Shown: piece after piece, positions 20,726 through 50,000 of the stretch | Position numbering within the stretch: position 1 is the first letter of the stretch | How the letters are laid out: each line of letters begins with the position of its first letter | NCBI RefSeq assembly: GCF_947568905.1 | Contig: NC_079172.1 | Location: forward strand, 9,548,001 to 9,612,000 | Source: Ostrea edulis | Taxonomy: Eukaryota | DNA length: 64,000 nt | Direction: 5' to 3' | The notes under the pieces: generated by a model | Databases searched by the model: none | Seen by the model: only the letters and a program-made list of their open reading frames with translations | What the model was told of the DNA's origin: nothing | Program-made: the position numbers and the translations under genes

Positions 20726-21155
20726 CTTGAATTGGAGCATAGAGATTGAGGGTCAAACAGTCCTCCTGACTATAGTTTGTGTGAAACATCCTTCGTCGAA
20801 TCTGTTCTCTATGACCCTCTGGGTATCTGAGGGAGGGTGGCTGTCTTATTTGGGGACACACCTCACTGACGTATGAAGCGTCATGCACATATTGCCACTT
20901 TCTGACCACAGAGGCTGGTGGCATAAACCGTGTCTTCCCTCCTCTTAGTGACGCATACCTTATCCCTGCAAACTGTTCCACTTGTTTGAAAGTGGGGTCT
21001 TTAGGGTACCCTATAACACGACCCCTAACTTGTCCTTGTTTGATTTCCACAATACGTTGTCCAATTTCTTTTACATAAACTTCCGAAAGGCAAGAATCAT
21101 GAGTTATCAGGATCACGAATCCCGCTATCAATACAACCGAACACATAACATCCAT
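20726..21155 (-). CDS. First coding exon B of a neuroligin-like / type-B carboxylesterase-family gene (paralog of exon A)
   Basis: ATG at 21155. Leader MDVMCSVVLIAGFVILITHDSCLS, then GQVRG, VEQFAGIRYA, RFMPP, KWQYVHDA, VCPQ and EDCLTLNLYAP. Phase-1 donor CAAG|GTATGG at 20726/20725, the same position as in exon A. 36 of 73 residues are identical to exon A in an ungapped alignment from ExGQR to VCPQ. Confidence 0.88.
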
Positions 21156-24100
21156 GTTCCAATCTCGTCAAAGTGTTTGCATGATTACATTATCGATGAC
21201 CGAGAAGTCTTACCGGGAAAAGTCATGAATGTGTGCGATAAACTAGTCCGAATAGAGACAGGTATGGAGAAGGGTCCATTAATCCAGGTGCCAGCAAAGG
21301 CACCCTATACAAATACAATGGCACGCTAGAAGTATTGGTTTAATCTGTCAATGAAGCGCTGTCATATTATGGCGGTATATAGTTTAACTGATCGTTGGTG
21401 ATCAGAACAGGTATTGATGGAAAGAGGCAGTTTAACGCTCGCAGACAACTATAACCTGCCACTTAACACTATCCAGCAATTTGTACACTCAATTTCATTA
21501 AGTGGCCAAATTCACCAAGAAATCTTTACGACATGTTCAAGTGGTGTCTCTTTGTATCTATGCTTCACTCCTAAAATCTAATTCCAAAGTCACAAAGAAC
21601 AAATAGCGGTGCCTCCGTAGTGGTGGAGCGAACATATAAAACCAGCCAATGATAGTTGAAAATATCGTTATATACATCTTGATGTATCTGTATTCCAAAC
21701 AAAATTAATTTCCATTGCAGAACGGCGCTCAAACAATCACATACGCCATCAACCAGCCACGTTTGACTCTTCTTATATATAAATAATAATGCTGAACTTT
21801 CATACACTGTTCGGCTCAGGTTGAGGGTTATCAATATAGAGAAGTATTAACTACCTCCATTATCTAAACACAAGGGGGGATCACAAAATACCATGTTTTT
21901 CTTTACGACTGAAACCCAAGAAATACGACTTAACAATACGACGAAGAAATTCAGCGTGTAATAAAACAATTCTTTTTCTTGTTCTCTCCCCACATTTCGA
22001 CACTTAATGTCGAGTCAAACATAGAGATAGATAAAGAAGGCGTCCCAACGGAAAGAATCTACAAAATCGCAATATCCAAGACAGAGAGTGATTACAGGGA
22101 AGAGTTCGGCCAAAATAGCAATGCGATGTACTCAAAACATCACTAATACAAAGATAGAAGGCTTATAATGATATTCATAACTAGAGTTTGATTTATAGCA
22201 TCTTCTTGTGAACTTCCTAACGATCGATGCACGACTAGGAATCAAGTTGCAGTGGTACACTGTCGCGGGTCGCACTTTGGGACAGCCGGCCAACTGAAAA
22301 GTCTCATTTTGGAGGGGAAAGTGTCACAAACCCTCTCAGTTGTGAAATAAGACAGACGGAGAATAGTCTCAACAAATATGTTAATTATGGGATGTAGAAG
22401 TTTAATCAATCTCTTGGTGAGTGAACAGCATTTGACATCTGCACATCTGCAGGACTCTGTAGAGGAGTCAAATGTCCCTTGCTTTCTAAGGATCTGGAAA
22501 AACTCCATGTCTTTGAATGCACACTTACATATTTCCATTTGAGTTCACATCAAAAGTTTCATCGAATAATCAAGAAATCGTTCAACAACTGGATATAGCT
22601 TTCAATCCGCTCCTAGTTTTAATTATAGATACATTTACATACAGTTTTAGATGAAAGTTGTATATATCTCTGTGTAAGAGAGAGAAAGTTATATCATATT
22701 CACTATAGTTTACTCTTCTTCTTTTTGCATTTTATTATTTCTTTAAATAAAAATTGCCAAAATTAAACTGCAGCAAAAATAATGCTTTATAGTGAATATT
22801 ACATTAAATCGTGAATTTCTTTTCTCACACAAAATAAAACGCAGTATAGCTAAGATGACCACTAAGAAATTGTCCAGGACCTGTTTTGGAGCCTTTAATA
22901 CTGCACCACAATACATATTTTTAGTACTCACTTTCTCTAATAGAAAATGCACGATGATCATCTGACCAGCAAATCACGTGACAATACCTACTATACCGTT
23001 CTAAGTAAGTCAATAACAGAATAGCGAAGCATGATACGCTGCGTAAAACATAAAACAAGTTTTGAAAGCTTTAAAAATAATAGCCTACATATGAAAAATA
23101 CCCACTTTAAACAATATTTTTACCACGGTACATGATGAGAATTGGGTAGCTCACACTACCTAGTATGCTGGTGCTCTCCATTGAAGGGTCAAGGTCACAA
23201 TATACACTGTATATTATAGATATACAACAACTGCGTTAAACACACGCTGCATGGTCCACCTTACTCAGTTCATAGCGGAGTACTTTCCCTTTATTTCTTA
23301 TACCGTTGTTTTCGACAGGTGTACGATTGTGGACAAAGATTTGTCTAAATCTGATGAGTGAATGCCCTTGCAATAGGGAAGATTCCTAGGGCATTCCGAT
23401 AGGAAACATGAGTTATAATTGTTGATAAAATATATTTGATCTCGGATGGATATGCCACATTTTGGAAAAGAGTAAACCCTTTGATCCTCCCCTCAGTACA
23501 CACCAGAATAATACGTCATAATTTCAGTCATGACGTAATATCACTGAGCGCAGCAAGGCCTATTTACATTGAATGGAGGTCACAAGACGTGGTTGTCAGT
23601 ATTGATTACGTAGACTGTAAACATAATTATATCAATGGATTTTTTATGACGTCATAATAACCATTTATTTCTCGTTCTGTTCAATTATGTTATGGTTGTT
23701 AGTGACTTTAACTGTGCTGCAAGCATTGATAATAATAACAATTTCTTGAATCTTATATAGCCGTGTTCTGATTAAATTCTTTAAAATGCCACATCGTACA
23801 TATAACTACAGAACATATATTGCTTACGTTCATTCGCTCTGAACTTAATCCATACACATTGTTTATTGGTTGTGGACGTTTGATTAAGATTCACAATGCT
23901 TCTTCACATAGCTGCGATCCCTTTATACATGTATCTACATTCAATATCTCTAGTGGTAATACAATTGGCATTAGGATTGATATACAAATTTATCGCCCTG
24001 ATCGGCGCGCTTTCTATATAATGAATTTATGAGCAGTACTATGTTGAATTCACAAGTTCGAACACGTGCAAAAAATGGTGACCGTGCAGGTTACATTGTT

Positions 24101-47037: not shown

Positions 47038-50000
47038 TGTTTTCCAGTGACAGTATTATATACTGTAGGAATAGCACATTGCAAACATGTAGACCATGTT
47101 TTCAAACTCATCTGCTGTCACGTCGGCCTATAATTTGCGAAACTGCACCAAAGAAAGAAATGTGTTGAATAATGCTTTGGTGTTAATCATTCCGGGAAAC
47201 CATATGTCTCAGGGGATTATTAAACTAAAAGAAAACTAGTCAGAAGCGATCTCTTCCGCTGTTTAGTTCATGCAGCATTTTCTGGCAAAATTGAGAGCGA
47301 CAAATCACCGAACGACGTGTTAAATTCCGATAATCTCTCATCAAACAACGAAATCTTAAGAAAACACCTGCTCCTTCAATGTAGATATCAATATGTTTCT
47401 ACAATACGTTTGCAAACTTCCTTCGTTCTATCTATATCCTGCGCCCTATGCTAAAAGACATAATGATTATTTACGATGAAAACGAAGTCGGGTGATGTAT
47501 ACGGTGGTACACTACAAAGAAATGTGTATTACATATCATGTCGAATGCAGCTTTTCTTTCATTGTCCACAAAAGACTTGCACCAATGTCGATCGATTCCA
47601 AGTTGACAATTAGTACCCGCGAAAAAAAGGAAAAATTATGGTATCCATTAGCGGAACGCCCAGCTGTGACGTATGGCTCTGACCACATCTATTCCTGTAT
47701 TAATCCAATGTTTCTTTACCAATATAGATAATATTCCATGTCCTTAAGACGGAAAAATAATATAAACACATAGCAAGATTTATAAGACAGAATAGTTTTA
47801 CAGTCTGAAAATTCCATTGGGAAATAAGGAAACTTTGCAGGACCACTCAAAATAATTATTGTATAATTGTGCGATGCACAGCACTTGTGAATATCGCGTA
47901 TCCACGGCTTGTACGTTGGTAATCGAATTTCTGAAACGATGTTCAATTCTTAGAGTTCGGATTCAATAAAAACAGTAACAGATGATTGAATTTTCGCAGT
48001 TCCCTTTACATCTGAAACAACTCTTTTTAATATAACTCTTAAACGTCACGATTCGTTCAGTCTATTCTAATGTATATCCTGCTGAAATCACTTTTCAGCA
48101 AAGGTAATTGTGAGCGCCGCAATTCAATATGTGTCCAGCATAGCTAAGAGGCTCAATAGATCACTGATGACCAAAACGAAGAAATAGAGGGCTTTGTCCC
48201 GAATTTGTTGCCGGTCTTCTGTATGCTTAGATAGGCTATTACCATGCTAAAAAGCTACTCGATATAACGAAAGCCTCCCCCGGCGTCGATGCTTTGGAGA
48301 AATAACCTCAGTAATGATACGTTTTGCCTCCTTCTTTATTAGGCAGTCTTCCCATCGAATCAGTTGGCTACTGTAACCTTTGTATCCGATGACTATAAAA
48401 TTATACTTTCCATCGAAATAGAAGAAGATCTAAAGTATGTATATAACGTTTTTCTGAGCAATGTCTTTTTCCAAGTAATATAGGACCTCGTCCCAATGGC
48501 GACTGACTGCGAGCATGATTTGATTGCTGCCTCGGAAACTTCCAACATACTATTATTTCATTTTTAAGAGTGTGAAAGCGGAGTAATGTCATCTTAATTA
48601 CGAGTTACAAAATGAGATAATGAGCGGTAGTGAGGAATTCTATTTCCGACTAAATGGTAGTTTTATTTCGTTATAGACGTTAGAAGGGAAGAACTGGATT
48701 CCGGTGACTCTCCATTATCCGTTATATATTTTGAAATTTCGTCACGTCCGCGGACTATTTCAGACTGCAAGATACGATTTGTCATGTGATCTCATATGAT
48801 CATTAATTTCCCCTATCGACTTCAAGCTATTTTAAGAAACAAAGGATGTGTCTACACATTCCGCAATTAGAAGCTCCTCGTGATTTAGAAAGGGTACTGG
48901 TTGTATCTGCATGAGATATTATATTTTTCAAGACATATTGAGAAACTAGTGTTCACCATACAATAATGCTAACTAATGCTGCACGTAAGGTTTTGAGGAG
49001 GCATGATTGGTTATTATCCCGTTTATTAGACGAAATCCAACTCTTTTCTTTAATGTACATGTAAATGTGTAAATGAATCGGATGAGGGAATCCGTGTATT
49101 TTATATTTTCAAGCAAATCAACTTCAAAAATATTTACAACAAGTTTGTTTTCCTTTTAAAAAGACTGGAATACGGTACGTGGACCGTAGGCATGTGTTTC
49201 TCACAGAAATATTCTAGGATGAAATAAAAACATTTGTTTTATATCTTGCGACATATAAATATTTCATTATAAATCTAATCGCTAGAATTGTAATGAAATG
49301 ATATGAAATAGTTGTAGCTTTGACCTTTGACCTCAGAATTAAGATTTGATCTGGTCCCTAAAGGTGAATTTCAACAGAGGGATACAATCTGGTCTAGATA
49401 ATAATGTTCGAGTTGCACACCATAACTCAGCAATATAAACTTGGTAGCTATATGAGAACAAAATAGCGATGCTCACAAGCTTCAATGTGGATTGTCATTT
49501 CTAAATCTCGGTGCAACTTTACAAATAATGGCCATGTAATTGCTGCGTTGTGCACGTCCTAATAATGAGCAACACATGGAGAAAACGTACACAAACTTTA
49601 ACAATCCTAGCGCTAGCCTTATTTGTGCATTCGATAATTTGATAATTCCTACAGGAACAACTGTAGGTGAAGCGCCACAAATTTTGACCTGTTCATAGCG
49701 CCCAAGCCTTAGTTTCAAAGGTTTTCTTTTATTGTTTCAACGCCTACCGTGGCACGGGACATTCGTTTAAGACCCATGACTTTCCCGTCTGATACTTTGC
49801 AAACGACCACTTACTACCCATGATAAACGTCCATAGTGTGACACGAAATCTAGAATTAAGCCCGGGGCTCCCCGTTTGCGAAGCGAATGGCTGAGCAGGT
49901 AGGACACTGTCATTGGTCCTTCAACATTGAAATGCGACATGAAGCAGCTTAATAAAAATATCAGGATTTCACATGCTGGATAGATGCCATAGCACATGTA

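What the first reader, a model, noticed from the sequence alone, without database searches (positions are those of the whole stretch)
20726..47142. Two paralogous neuroligin-like first coding exons in tandem with no gene body between: a candidate protocadherin-style variable-first-exon locus
Seen: exons A (46614-47037) and B (20726-21155) are on the same strand. Each has its own ATG and signal peptide, both are intact, and both end at the same phase-1 GT donor after EDCLxxNxYxP. The 25.4 kb between them has no gap, and neither the ORF track nor my reading shows the downstream family motifs (HGG, NYRLG, GNxGLxDQ, GxSxG/GxGxG) or a transmembrane exon. None appear in the 20 kb beyond B either, apart from whatever the N gap may hide. 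Established: this boundary corresponds to the end of the first coding exon of vertebrate neuroligins (splice site A); clustered protocadherins and chelicerate sDscam use arrays of promoter-linked variable first cassettes spliced to constant exons. Inference: A and B are mutually exclusive N-terminal cassettes of one gene whose constant exons lie left of the window, and more cassettes may lie outside it. About 50% divergence with intact frames argues against B or A being a dead recent duplicate. I do not know of such an architecture being described for a neuroligin/cholinesterase-like gene.
Basis: partly seen in the sequence, partly recalled or inferred. Interest (0 to 1): 0.88.

Follow-up and report, generated by a model that had tools for sequence, protein, structure and literature searches.

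The report
Oyster neuroligin alternative first-exon array
The window holds two of at least six interchangeable first coding exons of one oyster neuroligin (synaptic adhesion) gene; related molluscs' gene models show the same layout, but I found no paper on it, and use of exon A is inferred, not seen in RNA.

Summary
Exon A (46614-47037) and exon B (20726-21155) lie on the minus strand. Each has an ATG, an in-frame stop just upstream, a hydrophobic N-terminus, a carboxylesterase-fold match and a phase-1 G|GT donor. They are 39% identical. Nothing else in the 64 kb matches the constant part of the gene.

B is 88-93% identical to the first exon of RefSeq neuroligin isoforms in Saccostrea echinata, S. 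cucullata and Crassostrea virginica. In each species 4-5 isoforms differ only in a paralogous first coding exon and share an identical 736-743 residue remainder. So the variable-first-exon architecture is real, and the constant exons lie outside the window.

A matches none of the five modelled types and forms a sixth clade. It looks functional: it is intact in another oyster, dN/dS is about 0.14, the donor is kept, there is an in-frame indel, and 1.6 kb of upstream DNA is conserved. I found no spliced A transcript, and one related contig carries a frameshift.

The same layout appears in RefSeq models of mussels, scallops, clams and abalone, but not of octopus, a nemertean or spiders. The exon boundary coincides with vertebrate neuroligin splice site A. 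Five literature searches found no description.

The scan noted this gene's other cassettes before, on neighbouring DNA (s1-274679).

The parts
46614..47037 (-). Cassette A. A variable first coding exon of 141 codons plus 1 nt, holding a signal-like N-terminus, the N-terminal strands of the esterase fold and the complete Cys-loop (Cys95-Cys131). It is a sixth cassette type that no RefSeq model of related oysters uses.
   Evidence: PF00135, E 1.3e-14; in-frame stop 7 codons upstream of the ATG; dN/dS about 0.14 against L001; own clade, support 100/99; exactly two Cys in the mature part
46612..46613 (-). GT of the phase-1 splice donor of cassette A (AAAG|GTAAG). The donor is conserved in the contigs L001 and L005 from related oysters.
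47038..48655 (-). Conserved upstream region of cassette A, a putative own promoter and 5' UTR. It is colinear with L001 at 68.5% identity, while synonymous sites are near saturation.
20726..21155 (-). Cassette B. A variable first coding exon of 143 codons plus 1 nt, with the Cys-loop at Cys100-Cys133. It is the orthologue of the first exon of RefSeq isoforms XP_061171369 (S. echinata), XP_062567066 (S. cucullata) and XP_022343472 (C. virginica).
   Evidence: E 2.8e-19; 93, 92 and 88% identity
20724..20725 (-). GT of the phase-1 splice donor of cassette B (CAAG|GTATG). The exon's last G starts the Glu codon that begins the constant part (EKDNSS...) in the orthologues.
21156..22420 (-). Conserved upstream region of cassette B, a putative own promoter and 5' UTR. 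It is 74% identical over the 1.8-kb colinear stretch that includes the exon, against three contigs of another oyster, with near-invariant blocks 150-350 nt upstream of the ATG.
28142..31614 (-). Three colinear conserved non-coding blocks between A and B, at 28142-28507, 30056-30462 and 31223-31614. A short further block lies at 24455-24500. Their role is unknown; they could be enhancers, non-coding exons or old shared repeats.
   Evidence: no ORF or Pfam signal
15770..19322 (-). Colinear conserved non-coding blocks inside the long intron below B, at 18937-19322 (76% over 404 bp), 17435-17712 and 15770-15859.
10794..10991 (.). Assembly gap, the only N run in the window. It lies in the intron below B. 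I left it unfilled.

Best explanation
A and B are two members of a tandem array of at least six paralogous first coding exons of a single neuroligin gene on the minus strand. Each cassette supplies its own start codon, its own signal peptide and roughly the first 115 mature residues of the esterase-like ectodomain. That stretch includes the whole disulfide-bonded Cys-loop. Each cassette ends in a phase-1 donor that joins one shared second exon, which begins EKDNSSPFPVMVFIHG in the orthologues. That exon lies more than 20.7 kb downstream, left of the window. Transcription starting upstream of one cassette gives an mRNA with that cassette only. Downstream cassettes have no usable acceptor and carry in-frame stops before their ATGs. 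The gene therefore makes a small set of neuroligins. They share an identical neurexin-binding body, dimerisation helices, stalk, membrane anchor and PDZ tail, and differ in the N-terminal sheet and Cys-loop. These cassettes end exactly where vertebrate neuroligins insert splice segment A. Shown: the two exons and their features, the shared-body isoform structure in three other oysters for B and four other cassette types, and purifying selection on A. Inferred: that A is transcribed and joined to the same second exon, that each cassette has its own promoter, and that the cassettes change partner or glycan binding or cell-type-specific expression.
For: B is 93, 92 and 88% identical to the first exon of RefSeq isoforms in S. 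echinata, S. cucullata and C. virginica. Within each species the isoforms carry 4-5 different paralogous first exons and one identical constant part (one distinct constant sequence in each Saccostrea species; two in C. virginica, differing by 5 residues). The S. cucullata gene spans 175.6 kb, which fits cassettes spaced tens of kb apart. No constant exon and no other cassette type lies in the window. For A, the orthologue in another oyster (L001) is intact and keeps the AAAG|GTAAG donor. It differs by a 6-codon in-frame indel, with pN 0.22 against pS 0.69, giving omega of about 0.14. About 1.6 kb upstream is colinear and conserved. A forms its own clade with 100/99 support. All six types keep exactly two Cys in the mature part, 26-38 residues apart, together with the invariant core residues. 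The orthologue's body is a neuroligin. Its best solved-structure matches are neuroligins at E 1e-123 against 1e-68 for esterases, there is no GxSxG nucleophile motif, and the transmembrane segment aligns with NLGN2. The NLGN2 splice-A insert falls exactly at the cassette/constant junction. The same isoform pattern occurs in a second oyster neuroligin gene, in Mytilus, in scallops, in Mya, Mercenaria and Ruditapes, and in Haliotis. An earlier scan note (s1-274679) reports three further cassettes and the constant region starting about 18 kb left of this window. That note is a lead and I did not check it.
Against: I have no RNA evidence for this genome. The four runs offered were genomic DNA. No spliced A-type protein exists in the 5.8-billion-protein collection in the length ranges I could search, and none of the three annotated oysters models an A-type isoform. 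One related contig (L005) has a 13-nt deletion just before A's donor that shifts the frame. A has diverged more than B: 64% against 88% amino-acid identity to the contigs available. The species of those contigs are unknown, so this comparison is not calibrated. RefSeq isoforms are automated models, and I could not inspect their transcript support. Continuity between A and B (31.6-46.7 kb) rests on this assembly alone.
Confidence: 0.8

Rival explanations
1. A is a retired cassette. It belonged to the array and was under selection for most of its history, but it is now rarely or never used and is beginning to decay.
For: No RefSeq model in three oysters uses an A-type exon. No spliced A-type protein was found. 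L005 carries a frameshifting 13-nt deletion next to the donor. A has diverged more than B.
Against: The ORF is intact in this genome, in P0009 (99% identical to A, probably the same species) and in L001. Omega is about 0.14, the indel is in frame, and the donor and 1.6 kb of upstream DNA are conserved. A's path length in the tree (0.5) is similar to the C. virginica-Saccostrea distances of the modelled MMA and MNW cassette types, about 0.54 each. B-type spliced fragments were also missing from the same searches, so the absence of A-type ones says little.
Confidence: 0.12
2. A belongs to a different transcription unit. It could be a partial duplicate of the first exon captured by another gene, or one spliced to exons unrelated to neuroligin.
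For: The window shows no constant exon, so A's splice partner is unseen. Conserved non-coding blocks of unknown nature lie between A and B.
Against: A has the same strand, the same phase-1 donor and the same boundary residue pattern as all other cassettes. It keeps both Cys-loop cysteines and the fold's core residues, which only make sense joined to the rest of the esterase fold. No ORF of 100 or more residues elsewhere in the window has a Pfam match.
Confidence: 0.05
3. The tandem arrangement is an assembly artefact that joins two loci or two haplotypes.
For: One gap lies in the window (10794-10991). Nothing independent bridges 31.6-46.7 kb.
Against: A and B are only 39% identical, so they are not haplotypes. 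Independent genomic contigs of 5.9 kb are colinear with 44524-50100. Contigs of another oyster are colinear with 15.8-31.6 kb. Orthologous genes in other oysters span about 175 kb with several cassettes.
Confidence: 0.02

Closest known systems
Clustered protocadherins (vertebrate Pcdh alpha/gamma) and chelicerate sDscam, which have tandem 5' variable cassettes joined to constant exons by promoter choice (PMC4835542)
   Same: Both have tandem same-strand paralogous first exons. Each first exon has its own start and signal peptide and only a donor site, and all join one set of constant exons. In this gene each cassette is also preceded by its own conserved upstream DNA, and the cassette types are old and orthologous across genera.
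   Different: This gene has about six cassettes, against 14-100. The variable exon encodes only part of one globular domain (the N-terminal sheet plus Cys-loop of an alpha/beta-hydrolase fold), where Pcdh and sDscam cassettes encode whole domains. No promoter element is shared between cassettes. Neuroligins bind heterophilically. There is no evidence of stochastic single-cell choice.
UGT1A locus, which has variable first exons with individual promoters joined to common exons 2-5 (my own knowledge)
   Same: A modest number of paralogous first exons each change the specificity-determining N-terminal part, while the rest of the protein is shared.
   Different: UGT1A first exons encode a whole substrate-binding domain of an enzyme. 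Here the product is a catalytically dead adhesion protein, and only about 115 mature residues are swapped.
Vertebrate neuroligin splice site A (PMC7486126; structures 8gs4 and 8g7d)
   Same: Both diversify the same place in the protein. The cassette/constant junction aligns exactly with the point where the NLGN2 A insert enters, right after the second Cys-loop cysteine and the YxP motif. In mammals, an insert at this site changes heparan-sulfate interaction and synaptogenic activity (PMC7486126 abstract).
   Different: Vertebrates add or omit a short insert by cassette-exon splicing behind one first exon. The mollusc gene replaces everything upstream of that point by using alternative first exons.
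RefSeq (Gnomon) isoform models of bivalve and gastropod neuroligins, for example XP_061171368-71, XP_062567065-70 and XP_022343467-73
   Same: They show the same gene and the same architecture. B is the orthologue of one modelled cassette.
   Different: These are automated models without a published description. None includes an A-type cassette.

Membership tests
Neuroligin (catalytically inactive type-B carboxylesterase-fold synaptic adhesion protein) | Carboxylesterase type-B fold | tested here: met
   A and B match PF00135 positions 2-94. The orthologue P0001 carries PF00135 over the whole ectodomain.
Neuroligin (catalytically inactive type-B carboxylesterase-fold synaptic adhesion protein) | Closer to neuroligins than to active esterases or cholinesterases | tested here: met
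   On orthologue P0001, the best solved-structure matches are NLGN1-4 at E 1e-106 to 1e-123, against 1e-68 for CES1 and cholinesterases.
Neuroligin (catalytically inactive type-B carboxylesterase-fold synaptic adhesion protein) | Nucleophile serine of GxSxG lost | tested here: met
   On orthologue P0001 only, because this part lies outside the window. The sequence FGHGHGAA aligns with NLGN FGSGAGAS, and the domain has no GxSxG.
Neuroligin (catalytically inactive type-B carboxylesterase-fold synaptic adhesion protein) | Stalk, single transmembrane segment and cytoplasmic tail with C-terminal PDZ ligand | tested here: met
   On orthologue P0001, the transmembrane segment aligns with that of NLGN2, and the C-terminus is ...ITVV. 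It is not in the window.
Neuroligin (catalytically inactive type-B carboxylesterase-fold synaptic adhesion protein) | Binds neurexin | not testable with these tools
   This needs binding assays.
Variable-first-exon gene array (Pcdh / UGT1A / sDscam kind) | Two or more tandem, same-strand, paralogous first coding exons, each with its own start codon | tested here: met
   Shown. In-frame stops lie 7 and 5 codons upstream of the ATGs.
Variable-first-exon gene array (Pcdh / UGT1A / sDscam kind) | All cassettes join one shared set of constant exons | tested here: inconclusive
   For B and four other types this is shown in the orthologues' RefSeq isoforms, which have an identical constant part. For A, only the matching phase and boundary are shown. 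In this genome the constant exons lie outside the window.
Variable-first-exon gene array (Pcdh / UGT1A / sDscam kind) | Each cassette has its own promoter | tested here: inconclusive
   The upstream DNA of A (1.6 kb) and of B (1.3 kb) is conserved between oysters while synonymous sites are saturated. I had no transcription-start data.
Variable-first-exon gene array (Pcdh / UGT1A / sDscam kind) | Conserved sequence element shared by the cassette promoters (as in Pcdh) | tested here: not met
   The A and B upstream regions show no significant similarity. A paired TGACAG motif seen upstream of both A and B is absent upstream of two other cassette types.
Variable-first-exon gene array (Pcdh / UGT1A / sDscam kind) | Mutually exclusive or stochastic use in single cells | not testable with these tools
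   This needs 5' single-cell or long-read RNA data.

The most novel reading that the evidence does not exclude
Conchiferan molluscs (bivalves and at least some gastropods) evolved a promoter-driven neuroligin code. A handful of ancient first-exon cassettes, each expressed in particular neuron or cell types, swap the Cys-loop face of neuroligin. That is the same site vertebrates tune with splice insert A. The swap would change glycan or co-receptor binding and so synapse type. Cassette A would be a rarely expressed member that automated annotation has missed.
Probability: 0.25. Interest if true: 0.85.

Novelty: new member of a known kind. Interest (0 to 1): 0.62.

Why it matters
Neuroligin diversity is thought to come from gene number and from two short splice inserts. 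This gene instead makes its variants the way clustered protocadherins, UGT1A and spider sDscam do, from an array of first exons. The array swaps the N-terminal sheet and Cys-loop and ends exactly at vertebrate splice site A. If the cassettes differ in expression and in binding, molluscs reached the same diversification point by another genetic route. That would give an experimentally tractable set of natural Cys-loop swaps for asking what that face of neuroligin does. It also shows that a variable first exon can replace part of a single folded domain as well as whole domains. For annotation, A is a conserved cassette missing from current models of related oysters.

Tried and rejected
1. Gene body hidden in the window. 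tblastn (word size 2, E up to 10) with three orthologous constant parts and all other cassette types found nothing beyond A and B. I rejected this.

2. RNA evidence. The look-up of sequencing runs with kind rna returned six runs. The four I laid had flat depth across exon and flanks and colinear 5.9-kb contigs, so they are genomic DNA. They gave no expression information.

3. DNA of the orthologous loci. The S. cucullata gene range (175.6 kb) is too long to be served, and P0001 is not on record. I therefore could not map cassette order or look for an A-type exon in the annotated oysters.

4. Spliced A-type proteins. I searched with A alone (78-247 aa range) and with a 300-column profile (165-525 aa range). 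Both found only genomic read-through ORFs. The full-length search showed no A-type isoform cluster.

5. A shared promoter element like the Pcdh CSE. The A and B upstream regions are not similar. Both have two conserved TGACAG motifs within 400 nt (0.22 expected), but the MRG and MKL cassettes of other oysters have none. I rejected the motif as a common element.

6. Other genes in the window. Eight further ORFs of 100 or more residues have no Pfam match.

7. Literature. Five full-text searches combined neuroligin with variable or alternative first exons, bivalves, Crassostrea, tandem arrays and sDscam. None found a paper that describes this. A review of wiring receptors does not mention it either.

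8. Structure prediction. I did not run it.

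
Full report
**Observation.** Exon A runs from the ATG at 47037 to a last base G at 46614, followed by GTAAGT (141 codons plus 1 nt). Exon B runs from the ATG at 21155 to a last base G at 20726, followed by GTATGG (143 codons plus 1 nt). Both match the start of the Pfam carboxylesterase model PF00135, positions 2-94 of 515, with E-values of 1e-14 and 3e-19. Both end in EDCLxxNxYxPxx. In-frame stops lie 7 codons (A) and 5 codons (B) upstream of the ATGs, so neither can be read as an internal exon. The only N run is 10794-10991.

**No gene body in the window.** A profile-free search of 1.8 billion representative proteins with B gave a full-length 879-residue protein, P0001, that is 93% identical over the exon. 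tblastn of its remaining 736 residues against the window found nothing. The same was true for two other orthologues, even at E up to 10 with word size 2. Only A and B match any cassette.

**What the gene is.** P0001 is RefSeq 'neuroligin-2-like isoform X2' of Saccostrea echinata. Close relatives are isoforms from S. cucullata and Crassostrea virginica.
- Its best solved-structure matches are neuroligins 1-4 (E 1e-106 to 1e-123), against 1e-68 for active esterases.
- The nucleophile motif reads GHGHG where esterases have GxSxG.
- The transmembrane segment aligns with that of NLGN2, and the protein ends in ITVV.
- These features lie outside the window, so I tested them on the orthologue only.

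**The architecture.** I listed the 90% clusters and compared N-termini.
- S. echinata has four isoforms, S. cucullata five, and C. virginica five isoforms with four first-exon types.
- The first coding exons are mutually 25-37% identical paralogues of 131-170 residues.
- All of them join the same second exon, which begins EKDNSSPFPVMVFIHG.
- The constant part is a single identical sequence in each Saccostrea species. C. virginica has two versions that differ by five residues.
- B is the orthologue of one of these types (93, 92 and 88% identity).
- The S. cucullata gene spans 175.6 kb, which fits cassettes tens of kb apart.

So one gene with an array of alternative first exons is what related genomes' models show. 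In this genome the constant exons and the other four modelled cassette types must lie outside the window. I could not check that note here.

**Cassette A.** A matches none of the five modelled types (37% identity at most). In a maximum-likelihood tree each cassette type is a strongly supported clade across oyster genera. A, together with a genomic contig of another oyster (L001), forms a sixth clade with 100/99 support.

Evidence that A is a working exon:
- L001 keeps the ATG, the open frame and the AAAG|GTAAG donor.
- L001 differs from A by a six-codon in-frame indel.
- Non-synonymous differences are 0.22 per site against 0.69 synonymous, giving omega of about 0.14 with synonymous sites near saturation.
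- About 1.6 kb upstream of the ATG is colinear and 68.5% identical.
- Like all other types, A has exactly two cysteines in the mature part, 35 residues apart, and the invariant core residues.

Evidence against:
- No annotated oyster models an A-type isoform.
- The protein collection holds no spliced A-type product in the length ranges I could search.
- One contig from a related sample (L005) has a 13-nt deletion just before the donor.
- The sequencing runs offered for this stretch were genomic DNA, so I have no expression data.

A's divergence (path length 0.5) is larger than B's. It is similar to the C. virginica-Saccostrea distances of two modelled types, about 0.54 each. B is therefore the unusually conserved cassette, and A is not an outlier. 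I put the probability that A is a used cassette of this gene at about 0.75-0.8.

**Promoters.** B's upstream DNA is 74% identical to three contigs of another oyster over a 1.8-kb stretch that includes the exon. It has near-invariant blocks 150-350 nt before the ATG, while synonymous sites are saturated (pS 0.80). This fits a separate promoter for each cassette but does not prove it. The A and B upstream regions share no similarity. A paired TGACAG motif present in both is absent from two other cassette types. I found no protocadherin-like common element.

**How it probably works.** A transcript that starts at one cassette uses that cassette's donor and the first available acceptor, which belongs to the shared second exon. 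Downstream cassettes lack an acceptor and begin with stops. The proteins differ in three parts: the signal peptide, the N-terminal strands and the whole Cys-loop. Across types the Cys-loop varies in length (26-38 residues), net charge (-3 to +5) and glycosylation sequons. The junction aligns exactly with the point where the NLGN2 splice-A insert enters. In mammals, an insert at that site changes heparan-sulfate interaction and synaptogenic activity (PMC7486126, abstract). From my own knowledge of neuroligin structures, the residues that contact neurexin and the dimerisation helices lie in the constant part. That points to a modulatory role or one specific to another binding partner. This step is inference.

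**Spread.** I found same-species isoforms with identical bodies and paralogous first exons (22-67% identical) in:
- a second oyster neuroligin gene, with four cassettes in S. echinata;
- two Mytilus species;
- two scallops;
- Mya, Mercenaria and Ruditapes, with five full-length cassette types in Ruditapes;
- Haliotis.

Patella isoforms also have two different N-termini. Isoforms of Octopus, a nemertean and two spiders share one N-terminus. The layout therefore looks old within molluscs. These are automated models.

**Novelty.** Five full-text searches and one review gave no description of alternative first-exon arrays in neuroligins. The architecture is visible in RefSeq, and this scan has already noted it for the neighbouring DNA. 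I classify it as a new member of the known kind 'variable-first-exon array'. Its unusual trait is that the variable exon replaces part of one folded domain. What this window adds is two further cassettes at the 5' side of the array, one of them unmodelled elsewhere.

Noticed in passing
window 44397-44593: A very high-copy short repeat. Word depth in genomic runs is 1e5 to 1e7, against about 12-95 in the flanks, with many internal 'goes back' and 'skips' joints. It is probably an abundant short tandem or MITE-like element.
   Followed up: no
window 37729-38368, 43516-43998, 51342-51635, 53509-54476, 8029-8182: Five tandem arrays with these periods and copy numbers: 41 bp x15.6, 35 bp x13.8, 32 bp x9, 128 bp x7.6 and a perfect 39 bp x3.9. 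They lie in the DNA around and between the cassettes.
   Followed up: no
window 18937-19322, 28142-28507, 30056-30462, 31223-31614: Colinear non-coding blocks, 67-76% identical to contigs of another oyster although synonymous sites are saturated. I saw no ORF or Pfam signal there. They could be enhancers, non-coding exons or old shared repeats.
   Followed up: partly
L005:340-940: The A-type cassette in this single Logan contig has a 13-nt deletion immediately 5' of the conserved donor, which shifts the frame. It could be an allele, a species difference or an assembly error.
   Followed up: partly
proteins P0174, P0177, P0179, P0183 (S. echinata); P0167 (O. edulis); P0178 (C. virginica): A second oyster neuroligin gene, about 45% identical, also has at least four alternative first exons. 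The cassette tree weakly pairs two of them with two cassette types of the first gene. The array may therefore predate the gene duplication, but long branches make this unsafe.
   Followed up: partly
proteins P0313 (Mya arenaria), P0327 (Ruditapes philippinarum): These RefSeq isoforms begin inside the Cys-loop, only 30-43 residues before the constant part, and have no signal peptide. They may be truncated or degenerate cassettes, or model artefacts.
   Followed up: no
L002:567-1244, L003:4452-5129: A 225-residue ORF without Pfam match is called about 0.8-1.5 kb upstream of the B cassette in another oyster. The window has no ORF of 100 or more residues at the corresponding place, 21.7-22.4 kb.
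   Followed up: no
one search hit list: 584 representative proteins match cassette B at E of 0.001 or better, and most of the 150 listed are only 120-290 residues long. The ones I looked at are stand-alone cassette ORFs read through into the intron on genomic contigs, which suggests a large pool of such first exons in public assemblies.
   Followed up: partly
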